A stretch of 63,043 nt of DNA, counting the filler, from Octopus bimaculoides (Eukaryota), in the NCBI RefSeq assembly GCF_001194135.2. It is 4 parts of 4 records of this genome, joined end to end, with 100 filler letters (N's around TTAATTAATTAA, not from the genome) between each part and the next. Parts side by side here need not be neighbours in the genome. Positions count along the whole stretch, not along the records: positions 50,040 to 63,043 come from NC_068989.1; 3 more parts are not named here. One strand, given 5' to 3'. The notes under the pieces are model-generated. The model ran no database searches and was not told the DNA's origin. It saw nothing but the letters and a program-made list of their open reading frames with translations. A program made the position numbers and the translations under genes. Positions 50,040 to 63,043 of the stretch are shown here, one piece after another. Position 1 is the first letter of the stretch; each line of letters starts with the position of its first letter.

Positions 50040-50514
50040 GTGTGTGTGTGTGTGTGTGTGTGGGTGTGTGTGCATATATATATGTATATATTCATGTATA
50101 TACGTAATAATTTTATATTCAGGTATATACCTCGTTGTATACTGCTTAAAGTCCGTTCACAGTATTCGGTTATCTGATGTTAACAATAATGTGGAAGCAT
50201 ATGCCATTGAATTTAGCTCAGGAATTCGATTGCGTCCGTAAATTTTATAAGAAATGAGAAAAGAAATGGAATTCTCGAGCCTCGTGAATTTAATTTTCTT
50301 TGTCTTTAATTATATATGTATGTATGTGTGTGTGTGTGTGTGTGTGTGTGGATGAATGTATGTATGAGTCTGTGTGTTTGTACATGCATACACGCACAAA
50401 CACACACACACACACACACATACAATTATACATACATATATGTATACTGTCTGTCAATAAATTGTAACGGACATCATATATTCTTAAAATTGGGTAAATG
50501 TTCATCTGGTGAGC

Positions 50515-50558
50515 AATAGTAGTAGTAGTAGTAGATGTAGTAGTAGTAGTAGTAGTAA

Positions 50559-50620
<62 letters not shown>

Positions 50621-50640
50621 ATAGTGGTGGTGGTGGCGGC
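50515..50640. repeat. (AGT)n/(GGT)n microsatellite
   Basis: Direct reading. Confidence 0.95.
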
Positions 50641-51460
50641 TGTAGTTGTTTTTGCTATTGGCATGTCTTTTTTTATGCCTATTTTTTTGCGTTAGTTTTT
50701 GTCAGTTTTTTTATTATTATATATGTATAATTTAATTTTTTAAAAAATTTTTTTTTCCTGACAGAAGGTGTGAAATTACTCTGAAACTTTGTCACCGAAT
50801 AATTTCTGTTGAGGGATTTTAACTCTGAGATGCGTATATAAGATATAATATTATTCAAGAATATTTCTTTACATTCAAAGACAGGTATCCACAATAGTCA
50901 AACACGATATTCCACCTGAATACATTTTTCCTGCGGAAATATATTCTAGATATTAATATTTGTTCCGTTCTATTTTCGTATTTTTTTTAACGTTCACCTT
51001 TATTCCTGATATTTCTTAAAGAATCTTCCATGGGAGTGCGTCTTAATATTTTTTTTTGGTTTGAAAATTCCGACAAGATTCCTGGGAGATCTCACCTGAT
51101 GCAATTTTCATTGGATCTACTGAAATAATTTTTACGGACAGATTTTTGGCAAATATTTACATAAGACACGAAGAAAATCTTAATTTGTTTCCGTTCCTTA
51201 ATCTCTCAACGAATATTAGTGAAAATAGAAAAATTCGCATGGTCGAACTCACTCACAGACATGCGCACACATACGCAGCCCGCTGCCACATATTGATGCA
51301 CAAATAGACTTTCTCCTTACTTTTTCCTCTATTTCTCCTTCTATCACACTTACGCAAAGAGAGACTCACTTACGCGCACGAATACACCGCAAGAAGAGTT
51401 TCGACTGTACTGGCATGTAAACATGTGAGCATGCGTGTATATATGTATGCGCATGCGTGA

Positions 51461-51530
<70 letters not shown>

Positions 51531-51694
51531 AGGCGCAGGAGTGGCTGTATGGAAAGTAGGTTGCTTACCAGCCACATGGTTCCGGGTTCAATCCCACTGT
51601 GTGGTACCTTTGGCAAGTGTCTTCTGCAATAACCTCGGGTCGACCAAAGCCTTGTGAGTGGATTTGGAAGACGGAAACTGAAAGAAGCCTGTCG
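51531..51694 (+). mobile_element. CORE-like SINE 5' half (runs into gap)
   Basis: AGGCGCAGGAGTGGCTG..GGTTCAATCCCAC..GGCAAGTGTCTTCT..GACGGAAACTGAAAGAAGCC. Confidence 0.9.
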
Positions 51695-52888
51695 NNNNNN
51701 NNNNNNNNNNNNNNNNNNNNNNNNNNNNNNNNNNNNNNNNNNNNNNNNNNNNNNNNNNNNNNNNNNNNNNNNNNNNNNNNNNNNNNNNNNNNNNNNNNNN
51801 NNNNNNNNNNNNNNNNNNNNNNNNNNNNNNNNNNNNNNNNNNNNNNNNNNNNNNNNNNNNNNNNNNNNNNNNNNNNNNNNNNNNNNNNNNNNNNNNNNNN
51901 NNNNNNNNNNNNNNNNNNNNNNNNNNNNNNNNNNNNNNNNNNNNNNNNNNNNNNNNNNNNNNNNNNNNNNNNNNNNNNNNNNNNNNNNNNNNNNNNNNNN
52001 NNNNNNNNNNNNNNNNNNNNNNNNNNNNNNNNNNNNNNNNNNNNNNNNNNNNNNNNNNNNNNNNNNNNNNNNNNNNNNNNNNNNNNNNNNNNNNNNNNNN
52101 NNNNNNNNNNNNNNNNNNNNNNNNNNNNNNNNNNNNNNNNNNNNNNNNNNNNNNNNNNNNNNNNNNNNNNNNNNNNNNNNNNNNNNNNNNNNNNNNNNNN
52201 NNNNNNNNNNNNNNNNNNNNNNNNNNNNNNNNNNNNNNNNNNNNNNNNNNNNNNNNNNNNNNNNNNNNNNNNNNNNNNNNNNNNNNNNNNNNNNNNATAT
52301 ATATATATATATATATATAAAAGAATGTATACTCACACACACACATATACACACACACATATATATGTATATTTATATGCACTCGCATCCTTATCTGTAA
52401 ATTCTAAGCACGTACGTACACACACACACCTCGCATACACACACATATATTTTTGTGTGTAGGGTGGCAAGTTACATGTACATCCAGACGTTAATATAAA
52501 GATATTGCTGTACACAAAACTGTTTTCTAGTCGCAATAAAAAAAAAATTTTATGGCTGTATTGTCATAAAATTGTAAAGAAGTGGACTTTAGTGAATTCT
52601 ATCGGGGTCCAAGATGAGACCGCATTTTGACTTTGTACAATTAACTGCTATCTTTTGAACAGCTCTGAATACTGAACATTACATAAATATACACGATATG
52701 TACATGCACAGTTTTTCTCTCTCTCTTTCCCTCTCACTGTCTCTCACATTCTATTTCATTCCTCCCTCTCTTTTTCGCTCTTCCACAGTCGCTCTCTCTC
52801 TCTCTCTCTGTCTCTCTCTGTCTCTGCTGTTACTGTTTCTCTCAAACAATGACTACATCCATAGTTATTCAAACACCATTCGGAAAGC

Positions 52889-53033
52889 CAGGCACTGGCA
52901 ACCTTTATCGAGAAGCGGGCCGCATGAGACATTCTTCATCATAAAGCAGATCGCATTATTAAAACTATTCGTGGTAAATTTTTGTTGGTGTGCCATGCAA
53001 AAAGTCTCGCGGGCCGCAGTTTTCTAGTGACTG
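52889..53033. mobile_element. hAT (Charlie/MER30-like) MITE
   Basis: TIRs CAGGCACTGGCAACC / GTTTTCTAGTGACTG match at 11 of 15 positions, with GCGGGCCGCA subterminal motifs. Homologous to 23298-23445. Confidence 0.8.
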
Positions 53034-54084
53034 CTTTAAACTCTTGCCTTCCTGCGAATGTATGAATGTAGAGCTGCAAAATTTTCCTAAAGCAATAGCT
53101 ATTTATCACCAGCCAAAATTGGAGCGAAAGGTGAATCCTGCAGTCGCTAACTAAAAGATGCTGGAGATTTTATGCAAATATTGACTCTCACTGTTGTCAC
53201 AGGACATGGTTTCGTTTAGAGTTATCTCCCTTAGTTCTTAACTGTAATGGAAGCCTATTTCATGAGGCAAAGAAACCAGTGTAAGATACTGGCTTTTAAC
53301 TTCCTGACGCATTACTTAGGCCGATGTACACATAATACCAAGGAACTCTTGAGTGCTGCTGGTGACACGTAACGCAATACAACCATTCACGTGACCTTCT
53401 CGTACGTGACTAAACTGGAAACCTCACCAAGCTTGCTTAGTGAGGAGGGTGACTTTGTCACACTGCGGGATTAAAAACAAAACCCGCCACAAGGAGGTGG
53501 AATTCGTAGGAGTCAACGGCCATTAAGTAGAGAGTATATAGAGGAGTTAACCTCAATGGTAAAAAAATCCCCGACCCAGGGTCGCAGCGAAGTCGTGGGA
53601 AGCGGCATAGCAGATGTAAAAATGAGAGCATTGATTTTCATTCGGCAAAACTACACAACATAGGGTTGCACACACACACACACACACACNNNNNNNNNNN
53701 NNNNNNNNNNNNNNNNNNNNNNNNNNNNNNNNNNNNNNNNNNNNNNNNNNNNNNNNNNNNNNNNNNNNNNNNNNNNNNNNNNNNNNNNNNNNNNNNNNNN
53801 NNNNNNNNNNNNNNNNNNNNNNNNNNNNNNNNNNNNNNNNNNNNNNNNNNNNNNNNNNNNNNNNNNNNNNNNNNNNNNNNNNNNNNNNNNNNNNNNNNNN
53901 NNNNNNNNNNNNNNNNNNNNNNNNNNNNNNNNNNNNNNNNNNNNNNNNNNNNNNNNNNNNNNNNNNNNNNNNNNNNNNNNNNNNNNNNNNNNNNNNNNNN
54001 NNNNNNNNNNNNNNNNNNNNNNNNNNNNNNNNNNNNNNNNNNNNNNNNNNNNNNNNNNNNNNNNNNNNNNNNNNNNNNNNNNNN

Positions 54085-54141
<57 letters not shown>

Positions 54142-54154
54142 CACATATATATGT

Positions 54155-54300
54155 GACGGGTTTCTTTCAGTTTCCGTCTACCAAATCCATTCATAAGGCT
54201 ATAGTAAAAGACACTTGCCGAAGGTGCCACGCAGCGGGACTGAACCCGGAACTATGTGGATCGTAAGCATTCTACTTACCACACACCCACTCCTACGCCT
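54155..54300 (-). mobile_element. CORE-like SINE 5' half
   Basis: GACGGGTTTCTTTCAGTTTCCGTCTACC..GGTGCCACGCAGCGGGACTGAACCCGG..ACTCCTACGCCT. Confidence 0.9.
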
Positions 54301-54389
54301 ATTAATATATATTGTTGTCAAAACGCTGGTTCAATTCAATATCGAAAGCGATTGTCCCTTTATTTTGTTTGTTTGTTTGTTCCCTTCTT

Positions 54390-54442
54390 TCTTCCTCCCT
54401 TTCTTTCTTCCTCCCTTTCTTTCTTTCTGTCTTTCTTTATTA

Positions 54443-54501
<59 letters not shown>

Positions 54502-54590
54502 TTTTCTTTGTTTGTTTGTTTTTTTCTTCCTTTCTTTCTTTCCCGCTCTTTCTCTTTCACTCACTCACTCACTCACTCACTCACGCACTC
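54390..54590. repeat. (TTTC)n/(CACT)n low-complexity tract
   Basis: Direct reading. Confidence 0.9.
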
Positions 54591-54922
54591 TCTTTCCACT
54601 TTCTCCCCTCCCTCACCTGCTGCGGCTGTAAGAATTTCACAAGGGAGCGTTCACAGTACCGCCTTCCTCCAAGGCCCTCGATTGCACTCTATTGCAGTGG
54701 AAGAATGAGGTCTCCAAGTCTCTTAAGTGGTGTACGTGACATGCACGTCACCATCTTTTATCATTGTTTTATTTATATCATTAAGATATGTTATTTCTAG
54801 CAGCTCATCCCATGGCGTAAAGCATCTCGTTTTTTTTCTTCCATCTACACCACATTGAACGAAGTGCTAAACGTGTTACTGCGCATCATCAATTATATCA
54901 CTAGTTTTATCACACACGCAAT

Positions 54923-54958
<36 letters not shown>

Positions 54959-54984
54959 CATAAACATATGTATATATATGTGTG

Positions 54985-55093
<109 letters not shown>

Positions 55094-55325
55094 CTATATA
55101 CGTGTATGAATATAAATACATATACATGTATATATGTATGTATATAAATACATATATATTCAAAAAATTTGAAAACCCTACAAGACTAGGTGAAAGCACT
55201 AAGTTATAAAACATGTGACATATGATTAAAAATCTGTAAATGTACAACCAACCACACATCTGAGTACCTGATTATTTTTTCTAACGTATAATTCCTGTAC
55301 ATCACCTCCAAACCTTCCAATATAA

Positions 55326-55379
<54 letters not shown>

Positions 55380-56263
55380 GTATTTATATACATACACGTA
55401 TATAGACATACATTTGTATATCTACATGCATATATATAGTTATATATATACATACACACACACACACATGTATGTATATACACGCTAATGCTAAACTGTC
55501 ATAAAACAGATGGGCCCTAATAATTGCACTTTGTCAGAAAAGGGGATAAACTCTGATGGTATTCAGAAGCCTGTAAGCTATAAGTTTTCAAAAATATTCC
55601 TGTTACAACAGAACAGCAAATACAACCCGGCTAAGTCCTCCTTGATCTGTAACCCCATCTCTTTCCCTGACACACGCACAACTCCACACATTTGCATTCA
55701 CCTCTCATCTATCACGTGTTATCGCATTACAGTACAACACACAAATTAAGATACACAATAGACTAATACTACCTAAATATCTGAAGAAATCAAACCAATA
55801 CCAACCCTATGAAGTTAACGTACTCTGAATAAACTGAACTCTTCCTCTGATTGAGTTACTCTCTGCTACACCAGGATATACTCATCATTCTATTATTAAG
55901 AACAATGATAATGTATTCCCAAATGTGTCACAGACGCTGTAAAGCAGTGAGCCCAAGCCTGTATAAAATTTGGAATTGATATGTATTATGTTAGAGCAAT
56001 AAGTCTGTAAGGTGGATTAAACCATGTGATTAAACGTCTTGCACATAAATTTCATTAAACTAGATGCTATCCGTTTAAAATATGAACTCCGAGCTTGCTA
56101 TTAAAACCGACAATCACCTCACCTCATCATACAGTACATAGCTGTGGTGGTGCTCCCCTAGTAGGTGTGAAACAATAACATGCGCACGACAATTTTATAG
56201 TTGTATACACACACACACACACACAAAATCTTTATATACAGTGGCAGAGTGAGAGAGAGAGAG

Positions 56264-56315
<52 letters not shown>

Positions 56316-57307
56316 AAGAGAAAGTGAAGGTGCTCGGCATTGTGGCTAGGGCTGCCGCAATCACAATGTTGAGACCGTAGTTTGAATTCTCAAACCGTCT
56401 GTGCGTTGTATTCTTCAGTAAAAACTTCATGTCGCGTTGCTCGCTCCATATATATGTTTATATATATATATATATANNNNNNNNNNNNNNNNNNNNNNNN
56501 NNNNNNNNNNNNNNNNNNNNNNNNNNNNNNNNNNNNNNNNNNNNNNNNNNNNNNNNNNNNNNNNNNNNNNNNNNNNNNNNNNNNNNNNNNNNNNNNNNNN
56601 NNNNNNNNNNNNNNNNNNNNNNNNNNNNNNNNNNNNNNNNNNNNNNNNNNNNNNNNNNNNNNNNNNNNNNNNNNNNNNNNNNNNNNNNNNNNNNNNNNNN
56701 NNNNNNNNNNNNNNNNNNNNNNNNNNNNNNNNNNNNNNNNNNNNNNNNNNNNNNNNNNNNNNNNNNNNNNNNNNNNNNNNNNNNNNNNNNNNNNNNNNNN
56801 NNNNNNNNNNNNNNNNNNNNNNNNNNNNNNNNNNNNNNNNNNNNNNNNNNNNNNNNNNNNNNNNNNNNNNNNNNNNNNNNNNNNNNNNNNNNNNNNNNNN
56901 NNNNNNNNNNNNNNNNNNNNNNNNNNNNNNNNNNNNNNNNNNNNNNNNNNNNNNNNNNNNNNNNNNNNNNNNNNNNNNNNNNNNNNNNNNNNNNNNNNNN
57001 NNNNNNNNNNNNNNNNNNNNNNNNNNNNNNNNNNNNNNNNNNNNNNNNNNNNNNNNNNNNNNNNNNNNNNNNNNNNNNNNNNNNNNNNNNNNNNNNNNNN
57101 NNNNNNNNNNNNNNNNNNNNNNNNNNNNNNNNNNNNNNNNNNNNNNNNNNNNNNNNNNNNNNNNNNNNNNNNNNNNNNNNNNNNNNNNNNNNNNNNNNNN
57201 NNNNNNNNNNNNNNNNNNNNNNNNNNNNNNNNNNNNNNNNNNNNNNNNNNNNNNNNNNNNNNNNNNNNNNNNNNNNNNNNNNNNNNNNNNNNNNNNNNNN
57301 NNNNNNN

Positions 57308-57342
<35 letters not shown>

Positions 57343-58363
57343 TACACATGCATACACACACGTAGATATCTGTTGTCATGGTGAATAGGAATTGTTTACG
57401 AACTAAACAATTCAGTATCGCCATCTACAACATATACAGTAGTTAAGTAGTTTTCAACGAATTTCAAGTATGGAGCATCAAAAAGTTTAAGTAGGAAAAG
57501 AATATGTCACACTAGACAATGTATTGTTTTTATTCAATTTAAGTATTTCCAATGCTCCATGCTTTAAATATCTTATCGTCCACTTACCAACTCTGTATTA
57601 TGCGGCCACAATATCTTTTTAATGTTTAAACAATACGTTTTTTATAGGCCAATAAATGTACATGTTTATATATTTACTTATCGGTTCTTTCGCTATAACT
57701 TCGGCGATCTACAATGAGTTTATACGTCGTTGATGAAACCAAAATAATGTAGAAACATGTCTGGAATTTTCTATCATACATGTCGGAAAAATAAGAAAAA
57801 ATGTTAAGCACCATCTAATAGTGTTTTATTTTCTACTTTAACTTTTTAATGTTTTATGCATTGATATGCAGATATATTATTTATATAATGAAAGTAGTGT
57901 TTCGGAATAATTTAATCTTTAAAAGTGCCATTTGGTATTATAGACTGCTAAATTTATAAATCTATAAATAACAGACAATTTGGAAAATATGAACGAAATA
58001 CATAGACGGGTGATATAATATATGCATGTATGCATACATTCATACATGCATACATGTGTATATGCATATCTGTGTATATGTCTGTATATGATTTTTATAT
58101 ATATGCATATTAAAGAAATGGGTAGTCGTGTATATTCGCAAATGTAGTTAGAAAGGAAGACACATCGATAAAGATATGAGTAGTTATCTGTGTCTACACA
58201 TGCGTATATAAACGTGTGTATACAAATATTTAAATATAAATATAGATACGTATATACACGTAAATATTTATGTATACATACATAATATACATACGTTTAT
58301 GTATGAAAGTATATGCATAAGCATGCATGCACACGCACACACACACACACACATATCGGAGTA

Positions 58364-58401
<38 letters not shown>

Positions 58402-59114
58402 CAGTAGAGATTAATATAAACTGGGTCGATGTTTAATTTGGTTGGACAGACCGGACACATTACCAAATTTTAAGATAGTACTTTATACATTCACAAAAAT
58501 TCAAATTTCAGTAAACTTATTTAGGAATGTTCTAACCAGAATTAATAAAAGAGTCCCCAGTATACTGATTCACAAGCCTGAAACGGCATCAATAACAATA
58601 TAATAAAGAAGTAGAGAGCTCTCCATTTTAAATTTAATCCTGGAACTGAGAGGTAATCTGGTTAAATCGACAGTATAACAGGGAAGTCACGACAAACGTA
58701 TCCAGGAATTGTCTAGCTCCAGTAAGATAACATTTTCCGCTGACACACAAGTATAAAAAATCTTGTGCTACTCATAACTTTAAACAGTTAATCCTTCCTG
58801 GGTAGCATTGCACAAAGAACGCTTTAACTGCTGATTGACAGCTGTAGAAATTCCACAAGCGACCACTTGTAGGGTATAGGCTTTTCGAAGTAGCAACAAA
58901 CTGAGTATAAAGGCTGATGGGCGATGCAGACAGGAACTGCAAAAGATTCATTCCAGACATTTTCATAAGCCGTGACTATCTGTACAATTCTGCTAATCCA
59001 CTGTTACTAGAACTTTTTTAAGAGACACGAGAGGGTGATATGCATTTAGATTTGAACTCAGGGGGAAGAGAAGCGGAATATACACATCAAAGCTTTCTAT
59101 CGGGTTCTTAAGAA

Positions 59115-59189
<75 letters not shown>

Positions 59190-59292
59190 CTCTGTCTCTC
59201 TCTCTATCTATCTCTCTGTCTATCTATCTGTGTGTATGTGTGTGTGTTCATGTGTCTGTGTGTGTGTCTGTCTACATACATATATACATACA

Positions 59293-59348
<56 letters not shown>

Positions 59349-59448
59349 NNNNNNNNNNNNNNNNNNNNNNNNNNNNNNNNNNNNNNNNNNNNNNNNNNNN
59401 NNNNNNNNTACAAACATACATACATACATACACACATAATACATATAT

Positions 59449-59500
<52 letters not shown>

Positions 59501-60225
59501 ATCTATCTATCTATATATATATATATATACGCATACACATACATATGCAAACACATACAATGAAAAAGAGAAGAGAGAAGAGAGAAAGGGGAAGAGAAAG
59601 AAGGAGGGAACGAGGAGAATAGGAAAGGGGAGAGAGACAGAGATTATCTGTGTCTTTTATCAATTTGAGGTACATGGCTGTAGCAGTACTGGGGCATGTA
59701 TCGATTCATGGAAGGTAAAATAGATACGTCTCTATGTATGCATACATGGTTGTATGTGTGCATACGTATGTGTACGTATGCATGCATTATGTGTGTATGC
59801 ATATGTATCTATACATCTAGCTTTATCTCTCACATTTCATCTTACTCTTTCACTCATTTTTCTCGTTATATATATAAATACATATACACCCATTGTACAC
59901 GAAGTCATGAAATATAGACAAGCCAACAGACTGACAGATAAACGTCGATAGAAAGACAGACAAACCAACACTCATAACCTATCACTCTCTCATGCATGTA
60001 CACACGTAGTCATACACAGATATTATATATACCTAAACACACGCATACACTCATATATATATATATACACATATATGTATACGCACACTGAAAGATACAG
60101 GCAACGGACAGACAGACACAAAACATATATAAAAATATATACAATTCGATACTTGTATACAAGGGTAGAATAATATATATATATACAAAGATCTATAGAC
60201 AGATAAGGATGAATGAATATACATT

Positions 60226-60300
60226 GATGTATACGAGATGTATACATAGATGTATACATAGATGTATACATAGATGTATACATAGATGTATACATAGATG
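60226..60300. repeat. 12-bp minisatellite (GATGTATACATA)n
   Basis: About 6 tandem units. Confidence 0.9.
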
Positions 60301-60649
60301 AAGTAACTATAACAAAAAACCATATAGATACATAGATGTACAATCAGAAAGATACACAGACAGATAACAAACGAGAGATCATGTGATACATCTGTAGATT
60401 AACAGATGTATAGTTAGATTTTCTTATAGAACAATCGATGAAATTAGGTCTCATCGTTTCTGCTCATAGATTTTATTTTGTTTGGCATTCCTAATGTCAT
60501 TCGGTGCAAATATGCGTCCCACCTCAAAGGGATCACAAAGGAATGTCTGACATGACATGCGATCTGTGGTGGGCCTCACATACATCTGTTTAGAAACAGA
60601 CAAACGTATACGTATACGTAAATGCACATATGTGCACACACAATTACAA

Positions 60650-60781
<132 letters not shown>

Positions 60782-60896
60782 CACACTATACACCTCTGTA
60801 ATATATGTATCTATGATTGTATGAATGCATGTATGAACATAAACCAATACAGAGATGTACATATACATGCGTATATACATACACACAGATATACCA

Positions 60897-60935
<39 letters not shown>

Positions 60936-61033
60936 TACATTTTATAGTTATGTATAGGTAAATATGTATGTCTAGGAAAATATGTATATATATATACATG
61001 CATACATACATATGTCCATACATATATACATAC

Positions 61034-61095
<62 letters not shown>

Positions 61096-61101
61096 CTCTC
61101 A

Positions 61102-61140
<39 letters not shown>

Positions 61141-61768
61141 CCTATCTATTCTGTCTATTTATCTATATATATATGAATACACATCCAGTTTGTATGTAAA
61201 GAAGACGTAAACATTTGTATACCAACGTGCTTTCTGTTTTTGCAATTATATACATACATATGTACAACAACATATATTAGTGTGCATACATGCATACAAA
61301 CATACATACATACATACATACTCTAAACGTATATCTATATGCATTCACAGCTCCATACCCTTCCCCGCACATACATACATGCGTACATACAGACAATCCG
61401 AACATTCATTCGTATGCTACACACTAGATCAATATTATCGCTGTCAACAATCTGTTTTTTTTTATCTGTTGTTATCTCTTTACTTCCAACTTCGAAAAAA
61501 ATAAAACAACAAAAATTTCATTTTCTTATTTTCTATTTTTTGCTTTTTGTTTTTTTCCAAATAGTCACCTCTTTCGTGGCTTATCTCCACCCGTTCCTTG
61601 ACGGTTCTTTCGCATCTCTTTTTTTAAGCATACTCATCATCGTTCTTTGAGTGACGACTCACTCATCTCAAAGTATCTTTCCTTCTTTCTCTGCCTATCG
61701 CTTTCTTTATTTCTTTCTTTCATTCCTTCTTTCTTTCTTGCTCATTCTCTTTCTGTTTGCCCACTCTG

Positions 61769-61803
<35 letters not shown>

Positions 61804-61816
61804 GTCCACATGCCTG

Positions 61817-61869
<53 letters not shown>

Positions 61870-61873
<4 letters not shown>

Positions 61874-62280
61874 ACTCTTTACTCTTTACTCTTTCACTTG
61901 TTTCAGTCAGTTGACTGCGGCCATGCTGGAGCACCGCATTTAGTCGAGCAAATCGACCCCATGACTTATTCTTTGTAAGCCTAGTACTTATTCTATCGGT
62001 CTCTTTTGCCGAACCGCTAAGTTATGGGGACGTAAACACACCAGCATCGGTTGTCAAGCGATGTTGGGGGGACAAACACAGACACACAAACACACATATA
62101 TACATATACATATATACGACGGGCTTCTTTCAGTTTCGGTCTACCAAATTCACTCACAAGGCTTTGGTCGGCTCGAGGCTATAGTAGAAGACACTTGCCC
62201 AAGGTGCCACGCAGTGGGACTGAACCCGGAACCATGTGGTTGGTAAGCAAGCTACTTACCACACAGCCACTACTGCGCCT
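61870..62280 (-). mobile_element. Full-length, young tRNA-headed CORE-like SINE
   Basis: Minus strand AGGCGCAGTAGTGGCTGTGTGGTAAG..GGTTCAGTCCCAC..TTGGGCAAGTGTCTTC (MIR-CORE-like), internal (TA/TG) microsatellite, (GAGTAAA)n tail, CpGs retained. Confidence 0.93.
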
Positions 62281-62294
62281 ATATATCTATATAG

Positions 62295-63043
62295 TTATAT
62301 AGATAGGGTGATAAATTGAATATTAATTCAATTTAAAACCAAGTGGCCTAGCATATAAAAAACATGAACATTCAGAAAAAATTTATTACACGTGTATAAG
62401 GGATGACCACTAGGTGGACATCCAATATGCTAGAAAGAGATCATCAACGACTCAACCACAAAGAAAAATAATGTTCTCCAGAAAAATTTAGCGAAACACC
62501 AGAACAGGACAAAATGAGAAATATAAAATAAAGAATTAGCTGTGTACTTCAGTTTCGAACATTAACGTATTACTTACGTAACGACATCCCTGTTCTCGTC
62601 AGCACAACCGTTCTAGAATCAATATAATTTGCAGAACTATACACGAATTGTCTTCATGAAATAAGACTTGCACATAGTTCTAACGATTACACTGAGATTA
62701 TTTTTCAAAATGCCCTAGCTCTGGCGCGCCAAATTCCGGAAACAATTCTGCAGAGAATAATTCACTGCAGTATATGGTGCCGGCTGGAGAACATAACTAT
62801 TTAAATTATTATTTATATAGATAGGGTGATAAATTGAATATTAATTCAATTTAAAACGAAGTGGCCTAGCATATAAAAAAATCTGAAAATTCAGAAAAAA
62901 TTGTATTACACGTGTATAAGGGATGACCACTATGTGGACATCCAATATGCTAGAAAGAGGTCATCAACGACCCAACCGCAAAGAAAAAGTCTTCTGGAGA
63001 AGATTATTTTTCTTTGTGGTTGGGTCGTTGATGACCACTTTCT
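62295..63043. mobile_element. Penelope-like pLTR / retrozyme-type non-coding repeat: full 518-bp unit, partial tandem copy and inverted copy
   Basis: 62295-62470 recurs at 62813-62988 (offset 518). 62952-62988 is the reverse complement of 63007-63043 at 35 of 37 positions. The unit carries a hammerhead, then a T-rich segment and AATAAA, and ends at a TA-rich tract. Confidence 0.75.
62532..62614 (-). ncRNA. Type I hammerhead ribozyme with complete catalytic core
   Basis: Minus strand reads AGAA-c-GGTTGTG-CTGACGA-GAACA-(29 nt, inner TTAC-GTAA-GTAA)-TGTTC-GAAA-CT-GA-AG-T-A-CACAGCT-aa-TTCT. All core nucleotides are present with G10.1-C11.1, a GUA triplet and a 7+4 bp stem I. Predicted cleavage is between 62545 and 62544. 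Confidence 0.88.

What the first reader, a model, noticed from the sequence alone, without database searches (positions are those of the whole stretch)
62532..62614. Intact type I hammerhead ribozyme with a minimal, dimer-competent stem III
Seen in sequence: every conserved core residue is present on the minus strand (C3 U4 G5 A6 C7 G8 A9; G12 A13 A14 A15.1; U16.1 A17). Stem I is 7 bp plus 4 bp across a small internal loop, and stem II is GAACA/UGUUC extended by an irregular helix ending in a GUAA tetraloop. Stem III is only 3 bp with a 2-nt GA loop (ACU-GA-AGU). Established: Penelope-like elements, newt satellite 2 and metazoan retrozymes carry type I hammerheads with such short stem IIIs and cleave as dimers. 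Inference: two copies of ACUGAAGU can pair antiparallel as 3 bp + tandem G.A/A.G + 3 bp, so a transcript spanning tandem units could form a double hammerhead and release unit-length (about 518 nt) RNA, possibly circular. I do not recognise this family as described, but I cannot search to confirm that.
Basis: partly seen in the sequence, partly recalled or inferred. Interest (0 to 1): 0.85.

Follow-up and report, generated by a model that had tools for sequence, protein, structure and literature searches.

The report
Hammerhead ribozyme in a retrozyme-like repeat
A real, sequence-intact self-cleaving hammerhead RNA motif sits in a roughly 518-base non-coding mobile repeat of an animal (probably octopus) genome; it is a new example of a well-known kind of element, and this copy alone cannot release a unit-length RNA.

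Summary
A core-plus-stems descriptor finds only this site in the 13-kb piece and nothing in 2000 dinucleotide shuffles. Rfam's hammerhead models miss it, most likely because stem II is 39 nt long.

The motif lies in a 518-nt, 34% GC, ORF-free unit. Folded as a circle, this unit is unusually self-paired (z = -8.2; four control segments give -1.4 to +1.4).

The locus is not a tandem array. It holds 1.36 units, cut short at the 5' end and joined head-to-head to an inverted fragment of the same unit. This is the insertion pattern published for Penelope-like elements. Only one hammerhead is visible, so this locus cannot release a unit-length RNA.

Stem III is unstable as a hairpin (+1.9 kcal/mol). 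As a two-copy duplex with tandem G.A pairs it is stable (-4.8 kcal/mol), so a double hammerhead is plausible for the family.

This is a new member of a known kind: a metazoan non-LTR retrozyme, or an element dependent on Penelope-like elements. I could retrieve no other copies, so conservation, activity and expression are untested.

The parts
62532..62614 (-). Type I hammerhead ribozyme: stem I (4 bp + C/AA internal loop + 7 bp), core, extended stem II, stem III
   Evidence: Sequence. Sole descriptor hit in the piece and 0 of 2000 shuffles. The hammerhead fold is -18.6 kcal/mol against an MFE of -20.6 kcal/mol, and stems I and II are in the MFE.
62596..62602 (-). Core strand C3 U4 G5 A6 C7 G8 A9 (CUGACGA)
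   Evidence: Sequence
62557..62595 (-). Stem II, 39 nt: G10.1-C11.1 closing pair, 5 bp, GG/AA internal loop, 5 bp, bulged C, 5 bp, GUAA tetraloop
   Evidence: Folding (-11.8 kcal/mol on its own). The 30-nt excess over the models explains the weak covariance-model scores.
62545..62556 (-). G12 A13 A14, then stem III segment A15.1-CUGAAG-U16.1, then A17. The predicted cut is 3' of 62545 (between 62545 and 62544).
   Evidence: Sequence. Hairpin +1.9 kcal/mol against two-copy duplex -4.8 kcal/mol.
62295..62812 (-). One complete 518-nt period of the non-coding repeat unit (34% GC, no ORF longer than 58 codons)
   Evidence: Repeat spacing 518-520. ORF lists. Circular fold -150.5 kcal/mol, z = -8.2, against controls of -1.4 to +1.4.
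62295..62480 (-). Downstream copy (B) of the repeated segment, unit positions about 65-250. The 3' end of the element is at about 62295-62279, next to TA-rich sequence and a SINE.
   Evidence: BLAST and alignment
62813..62993 (-). Upstream partial copy (A), 5'-truncated at unit position about 68, 91-94% identical to B. It lacks a hammerhead of its own.
62995..63043 (+). Inverted fragment of the same unit (positions about 65-113), joined head-to-head to copy A. It forms a palindrome with 62952-62993 and runs into the end of the piece.
   Evidence: Self-BLAST 62952-63043 against its own reverse complement, 87%. Alignment.

Best explanation
The site is a sequence-intact type I hammerhead ribozyme. 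It belongs to a non-coding, AT-rich, strongly self-complementary repeat of about 518 nt, of the metazoan non-LTR retrozyme type. That type is a non-autonomous retroelement thought to be mobilised by Penelope-like elements.

Inferred life cycle for the family, taken from the published model:
1. Longer-than-unit transcripts are cut 3' of GUA by the hammerhead.
2. The cut happens most efficiently when two neighbouring copies share an extended stem III (a double hammerhead). It leaves a 5'-OH and a 2',3'-cyclic phosphate.
3. A host tRNA ligase closes the unit into a circle.
4. A Penelope-type reverse transcriptase/endonuclease copies more than one unit's length back into TA-rich DNA.

This locus is the footprint of one such event. 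It holds 1.36 head-to-tail units, cut short at the 5' end and joined to an inverted 5'-truncated fragment.

Shown here: the motif, its non-random nature, the repeat architecture, the strong self-pairing of the unit, and the energetics of stem III.
Inferred: cleavage, circularisation, the mobilising enzyme and the host species. The host is probably an octopus, judged from SINEs I recognise from memory.

With one hammerhead in view, this copy can at most be cut once. It is probably an old, inert insertion.
For: - Motif: the core and all three helices are present. It is the only descriptor hit in the piece, with 0 hits in 2000 shuffles.
- Fold: stems I and II are part of the MFE of the 83-mer, and also of the whole circular unit.
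- Stem III: the hairpin is +1.9 kcal/mol, and the duplex between two copies is -4.8 kcal/mol and is the cofold minimum.
- Repeat: the direct repeat has a 518-520 period. There is no ORF and no Pfam domain in the piece. GC is 34%.
- Self-pairing: the circular unit folds at -150.5 kcal/mol, against -102 +/- 5.9 for shuffles (z = -8.2). Four control segments on both strands give z from -1.4 to +1.4.
- Insertion pattern: the partial tandem plus inverted 5'-truncated fragment matches the pattern described for Penelope-like elements (PMC8557442).
- Published class features match: type I hammerhead, short tandem units, low GC, no LTR/PBS/PPT, highly self-paired circular RNA (PMC7229834).
- Unit length is within published ranges: about 500 bp for pDo500, and 51-972 bp.
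- Penelope elements are reported in cephalopod genomes.
Against: - No second copy of the hammerhead could be found anywhere, so there is no conservation or covariation evidence.
- Rfam hammerhead models do not hit. A small model built from four experimentally active retrozyme hammerheads gives only 7.2 bits, E about 2.4.
- The 83-mer fold is not significantly more stable than its shuffles (z = -1.7).
- The canonical loop 1-loop 2 tertiary-contact nucleotides are not evident.
- Copies A and B differ by 6-9%, and the changes mostly break predicted pairs rather than compensate. This fits an old, decaying insertion.
- The antisense strand is also strongly structured (z = -5.8), so self-pairing alone does not identify the functional strand.
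- Only 1.36 units are seen. A rearranged satellite cannot be excluded.
Confidence: 0.7

Rival explanations
1. It is a fragment of a hammerhead-bearing satellite DNA, like newt satellite 2, Schistosoma Sm-alpha or cricket pDo500. Such arrays are amplified by unequal crossing-over, and this one was later broken by an inversion and a SINE. It would not be a retrotransposed insertion.
For: Head-to-tail repetition with a period of about 518 nt. The pDo500 units are about 500 bp and carry a type I hammerhead. The piece ends at 63043, so more sequence may lie beyond it.
Against: Only 1.36 units are present, not an array. The upstream copy and the inverted fragment are both cut at the same unit position (about 65-68) and joined head-to-head. 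That is the published Penelope-type insertion pattern, not a product of unequal crossing-over. The literature now treats such satellites as retrozymes.
Confidence: 0.15
2. It is the pseudo-LTR of an autonomous Penelope-like element. The reverse transcriptase/GIY-YIG gene would lie beyond the end of the piece.
For: Penelope-like elements carry type I hammerheads in their flanking repeats and insert as partial tandems with inverted truncated copies.
Against: The repeat period is 518 nt with nothing coding between the repeated segments. No protein domain is found in the 13-kb piece. Hammerheads of metazoan Penelope-like elements are mostly 'minimal' variants without a stem III, whereas this one has a stem III and a long stem I.
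Confidence: 0.07
3. It is a chance resemblance to a hammerhead in AT-rich repetitive DNA, with no catalytic meaning.
For: No Rfam hit. The 83-mer fold has z of only -1.7. There is no comparative support.
Against: 0 descriptor hits in 2000 shuffles of the piece. The motif sits in exactly the genomic context known for such ribozymes: a repeat unit with extreme self-pairing and a Penelope-type architecture.
Confidence: 0.03

Closest known systems
Metazoan non-LTR retrozymes (Cervera & de la Pena 2020, PMC7229834): coral, mussel and axolotl elements
   Same: - Type I hammerhead once per unit.
- Non-coding unit with low GC.
- Head-to-tail repetition.
- Strongly self-paired predicted circular RNA.
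- An 8-nt A15.1-to-U16.1 segment of the same design as mussel (ACGCGCGU) and axolotl (ACACGUGU) in the paper's constructs.
- The GUA cut triplet, as in axolotl Ax353.
   Different: - The unit is 518 nt, against 170-400 nt in that paper, although 51-972 bp is reported in the 2026 preprint.
- Stem II is 39 nt and 15 bp, instead of about 4 bp plus a loop.
- The stem III segment is not a Watson-Crick palindrome, so the dimer helix has a central tandem G.A/A.G.
- The canonical loop-loop contact nucleotides are not evident.
- Only 1.36 units are present here.
- Expression and cleavage are untested.
Hammerheads in pseudo-LTRs of Penelope-like elements (Cervera & de la Pena 2014, PMC4209133; Craig et al. 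2021, PMC8557442)
   Same: Type I topology. A longer-than-usual helix II. Proposed action as a dimer. The insertion architecture: a partial tandem with an inverted 5'-truncated copy next to TA-rich sequence.
   Different: There is no RT/GIY-YIG ORF within the repeat. Most metazoan Penelope-type hammerheads lack stem III and have a short helix I (4-5 bp), whereas this one has a 2-3 bp stem III and a 7+4 bp helix I.
pDo500 satellite of Dolichopoda cave crickets (PMC2837043)
   Same: A repeat unit of about 500 bp with one type I hammerhead. Both single and double hammerhead forms have been proposed.
   Different: pDo500 is a large satellite array (about 5% of a genome) with shown processing of multimers into monomers. 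Here there is a short, rearranged copy and no expression data. I did not test sequence similarity to it.
Newt satellite 2 / axolotl HHR_Amex1
   Same: A stem III too weak to fold alone, with a stable extended stem III in a double hammerhead.
   Different: The amphibian stem III is 1 bp plus a palindromic tetraloop, and the loop 1-loop 2 contacts are conserved. Here there are 2-3 bp, a non-palindromic centre and a much longer stem II.

Membership tests
Hammerhead ribozyme, type I | Conserved core CUGANGA ... GAAA ... UH, with H17 not G | tested here: met
   CUGACGA (62602-62596), GAAA (62556-62553), U16.1 A17 (62546-62545). Sole hit in the piece and 0 of 2000 shuffles.
Hammerhead ribozyme, type I | Three helices around the core, with the G10.1-C11.1 and A15.1-U16.1 closing pairs. 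Helix I is open; helices II and III are closed. | tested here: met
   Pair list. Stems I and II are in the MFE. Stem III is only 2-3 bp.
Hammerhead ribozyme, type I | Match to curated covariance models (Rfam Hammerhead_1, HH9, HH10 and others) | tested here: not met
   No hit at gathering score or at E<=10 on 251 nt. The likely cause is the 30-nt excess in stem II, as seen in the model alignment.
Hammerhead ribozyme, type I | Similarity to experimentally active retrozyme hammerheads under a sequence-plus-structure model | tested here: inconclusive
   A model built from 4 validated sequences aligns core to core but scores 7.2 bits, E about 2.4. Four seed sequences make a narrow model.
Hammerhead ribozyme, type I | Conserved core and compensatory stem changes across copies | not testable with these tools
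   No other copy was found. The collections on hand hold no cephalopod genome.
Hammerhead ribozyme, type I | Mg2+-dependent self-cleavage at the predicted site | not testable with these tools
   Needs an experiment.
Metazoan non-LTR retrozyme | Head-to-tail tandem units of a few hundred bp, each with a type I hammerhead | tested here: inconclusive
   The period of 518-520 is confirmed, but only 1.36 units and one hammerhead are present. The piece ends at 63043.
Metazoan non-LTR retrozyme | Non-coding, low GC (<45-50%), no LTR/PBS/PPT | tested here: met
   GC is 34%. The longest stop-free stretch is 58 codons. No Pfam hit. No database relatives for any reading frame. PBS and PPT were not looked for specifically.
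Metazoan non-LTR retrozyme | Unit RNA predicted to be highly self-paired | tested here: met
   z = -8.2 with 68% of bases paired. Controls range from -1.4 to +1.4. The antisense strand also scores -5.8.
Metazoan non-LTR retrozyme | Accumulates as linear and circular unit-length RNA | not testable with these tools
   No transcriptome data are on hand.
Metazoan non-LTR retrozyme | Autonomous Penelope-like elements present in the same genome | not testable with these tools
   The literature reports Penelope elements in cephalopods, but the species of this piece is only inferred.
Penelope-like element pseudo-LTR hammerhead | Hammerhead in repeats that flank an RT + GIY-YIG ORF | tested here: not met
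   No ORF between the repeated segments and no domain in the piece.
Penelope-like element pseudo-LTR hammerhead | Insertion as a partial tandem with an adjacent inverted 5'-truncated copy | tested here: met
   compared with the description in PMC8557442.

The most novel reading that the evidence does not exclude
This is the first glimpse of an undescribed cephalopod retrozyme family that current Rfam models cannot see. On this reading its unit of about 518 nt is expressed as abundant circular RNA. Its hammerhead uses an extended stem II, with an internal loop taking the place of loop 2. A G.A-containing double-hammerhead stem III acts as the switch between cutting in multimers and staying intact as a monomeric circle.
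Probability: 0.3. Interest if true: 0.45.

Novelty: new member of a known kind. Interest (0 to 1): 0.3.

Why it matters
If the family is active, it adds cephalopods to the animals that make ribozyme-processed circular RNAs. It would also be a natural hammerhead with an unusually long stem II and a non-Watson-Crick dimer helix, which is useful for testing how stem III strength gates cleavage. The Rfam miss shows that model-based surveys undercount such variants; the giant-squid genome paper, for example, counted 235 Hammerhead_1 hits. It does not change the current picture of hammerheads or retrozymes.

Tried and rejected
- Rfam scans at gathering score and at E<=10 gave no hammerhead. All the sub-threshold 'miRNA' hits sit on microsatellites.
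- My first pattern search found nothing because its 30-nt gap limit is shorter than the 39-nt stem II. That was my error, not evidence.
- Attempts to fetch other copies or the neighbouring genome all failed:
  - Exact-protein look-ups of three nearby ORFs.
  - A 746-aa query joining every stop-free frame of the unit.
  - The SINE ORF.
  - Two metagenome scans and one viral scan.
- The bacterial/archaeal genome scan gave 8 matches. About 7 are expected by chance, by my own estimate from the collection size in the tool's description, and the flanks of the 8 matches, read by eye, show no obvious helix I or III. I rejected them.
- A covariance model built from four validated retrozyme hammerheads was too narrow to be decisive.
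- Comparing copies A and B for compensatory changes showed none.
- A Pfam scan of ten non-repetitive stop-free translated fragments from the piece (eight flanking, two from the repeat unit) found nothing.
- A literature search for the SINE sequence found nothing, and ARAGORN found no tRNA.
- I considered a Pol III B-box-like reading of UGUUCGAAAC and dropped it. The match follows from the hammerhead core itself.

Full report
**What is there.** The minus strand from 62614 to 62532 reads AGAAC GGUUGUG CUGACGA [GAACA GG GAUGU C GUUAC GUAA GUAAU ACGUU AA UGUUC] GAA ACUGAAGU A CACAGCU AA UUCU. This is the full hammerhead consensus:
- C3-A9 is CUGACGA (62602-62596).
- G10.1 and C11.1 close stem II.
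- G12 A13 A14 lie at 62556-62554.
- A15.1 and U16.1 close stem III (62553 and 62546).
- A17 is at 62545, followed by C1.1 at 62544.

Stem I is open, so the motif is type I. It has 7 bp (two of them G.U), a C/AA internal loop and 4 more bp. Stem II is 39 nt and has 15 bp in three blocks. Stem III is ACU-GA-AGU. Since a 2-nt loop is not sterically realistic, the monomer really has 2 bp closed by UGAA.

**Is it more than chance?** I wrote a descriptor requiring the core, stem I of at least 5 bp, stem II of at least 4 bp and stem III of at least 2 bp. It finds this site and nothing else on either strand of the piece, and it finds nothing in 2000 dinucleotide-preserving shuffles of the piece. The 83-mer's folding energy is unremarkable on its own (z = -1.7). 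Its minimum-energy structure does contain stems I and II, and the full hammerhead secondary structure lies 2 kcal/mol above the minimum.

**Database models.**
- Rfam 15 reports no hammerhead family at gathering score, nor at E<=10 in a 251-nt search.
- I built a small covariance model from the four retrozyme hammerheads that Cervera and de la Pena cloned and showed to cleave (supplement of PMC7229834).
- That model aligns core to core with the site but has to skip 30 nt inside stem II. It scores only 7.2 bits, E about 2.4.
- The likely cause of the misses is therefore the long stem II, not a defective core.
- The formal test 'recognised by a curated model' is still not met.

**Stem III and the dimer idea.** With nearest-neighbour energies, the monomeric stem III hairpin costs +1.9 kcal/mol. 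Two copies of GAAACUGAAGUAC pair as 3 bp, a tandem G.A/A.G and 3 bp at -4.8 kcal/mol, and this is the predicted cofold minimum. The validated mussel and axolotl hammerheads have an 8-nt segment of the same design, but fully palindromic (ACGCGCGU and ACACGUGU). The G.A centre is a modest variation on that design. Published invertebrate retrozyme hammerheads with 2 bp and a tetraloop cleave as monomers, so a need for dimers is plausible but not established.

**Context.** The piece is draft eukaryotic sequence. It has four N gaps, many microsatellites and 34% GC. It also holds three copies of a tRNA-derived SINE-like repeat. I recognise this repeat from memory as the abundant octopus SINE. Octopus genomes are reported to be SINE-rich and to carry Penelope elements. 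I could not confirm the species.

**Repeat architecture.**
- Segments 62292-62468 and 62810-62988 are 94% identical direct repeats, 518-520 nt apart. The hammerhead lies in the stretch between them.
- Numbering the unit from the cut site, the downstream copy (B) covers positions about 65-250 and ends at about 62295-62279, against TA-rich sequence and a SINE.
- The upstream copy (A) begins only at position about 68.
- Copy A is fused at about 62995 to an inverted fragment of the same unit, which also starts at position about 65 and runs into the end of the piece.
- The locus is therefore 1.36 head-to-tail units, 5'-truncated, with an inverted 5'-truncated partner.
- This is the arrangement Craig et al. 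describe for insertions of Penelope-like elements.
- It is also what reverse transcription of a longer-than-unit or circular template would leave, as proposed by Cervera and de la Pena.
- It means there is no second hammerhead directly upstream, so this locus cannot yield a unit-length RNA.

**The unit as RNA.**
- A composite full unit (62544->62295 plus 62812->62545; 518 nt, 34% GC) folds as a circle at -150.5 kcal/mol.
- Dinucleotide shuffles of it average -102 +/- 5.9 kcal/mol (z = -8.2). In the fold, 68% of bases are paired and hammerhead stems I and II are kept.
- Four 518-nt control segments from the same piece, on both strands, give z between -1.4 and +1.4.
- The antisense strand is also structured (z = -5.8). 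The unit is therefore self-complementary at the DNA level, and the sense strand gains further from 19 G.U pairs.
- The unit has no ORF longer than 58 codons. No Pfam domain was found in the ten non-repetitive stop-free fragments tested from the piece.
- Copies A and B differ by 6-9%, and the differences mostly break predicted pairs. The insertion looks old and there is no sign of selection at this locus.

**Relatives.** I could not obtain any other copy. Exact-protein look-ups of nearby ORFs, a query joining all stop-free frames of the unit, the SINE ORF, two metagenome scans and a viral scan all returned nothing. Eight bacterial matches to a relaxed pattern are about the number I estimate by chance, and their flanks, read by eye, show no obvious helix I or III.

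**Comparison with what is known.** The closest class is the metazoan non-LTR retrozyme. Its published features are a type I hammerhead, short non-coding low-GC tandem units, highly self-paired circular RNAs, cleavage by the hammerhead and ligation by a tRNA ligase (PMC7229834). A 2026 preprint argues that these elements are non-autonomous derivatives of Penelope-like elements. The unit length of 518 nt exceeds the 170-400 nt of the 2020 paper. It is within the 51-972 bp of the preprint and close to the ~500-bp pDo500 satellite. It is not a Penelope pseudo-LTR in the strict sense, because no ORF lies between the repeats. I found no paper describing a cephalopod retrozyme. The giant-squid genome paper merely counts 235 Rfam Hammerhead_1 hits.

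**Verdict.** This is a genuine, intact type I hammerhead in a retrozyme-like element: a new member of a known kind.
- Shown: the motif, that it is not a chance match, the architecture and the structural propensity.
- Inferred by analogy: cleavage, dimer dependence, circularisation and mobilisation by Penelope-type enzymes.
- This particular copy is most likely an inert relic.
- Interest is modest (0.3). The mildly unusual points are the long stem II, the G.A-centred dimer helix and invisibility to Rfam.

Noticed in passing
window 61880-62285 (-), 51526-51694 (+), 54131-54315 (-): Three copies (80-89% identical) of a tRNA-derived SINE-like repeat. One abuts the 3' end of the hammerhead unit. 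I recall it as the abundant octopus SINE, which would place the piece in an octopus genome. ARAGORN calls no tRNA there.
   Followed up: partly
window 62952-63043: A near-perfect palindrome (87% over 92-94 nt) centred at about 62997. It is formed by copy A of the unit and an inverted fragment, and it reaches the end of the piece. A read-through transcript would form a hairpin with arms of about 45 nt (87% complementary). The palindrome may also be why the assembly or piece ends here.
   Followed up: partly
window 57724-57767 (+): The best hit of my 4-sequence retrozyme-hammerhead model (18.1 bits, E about 0.001): ACGUCG UUGAUGA AACC..UGUA GAAAC AUGUC UGGAAU. It has U in place of C3 and an unpaired stem II, so it is not an intact ribozyme. 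It is either chance in AT-rich DNA or a decayed canonical type I hammerhead.
   Followed up: partly
window 50040-63043, e.g. 50310-50443, 54924-54997, 60965-61035: Dozens of sub-threshold Rfam 'miRNA' matches (mir-297, mir-466, mir-3149 and others). All lie on (TG)n, (TA)n or (CA)n microsatellites, so they are artefacts of simple repeats.
   Followed up: yes
window 51695-52296, 53690-54084, 56477-57307, 59349-59408: Four runs of N (60-831 nt). The piece is a gapped draft scaffold, and two SINE copies are cut by gaps.
   Followed up: no
L001-L008 (bacterial genome contigs): Eight matches to CTGANGAGAACA..TGTTCGAAAC in bacterial genomes and MAGs. The number roughly equals my estimate of chance matches, and their flanks, read by eye, show no obvious helix I or III.
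   Followed up: yes
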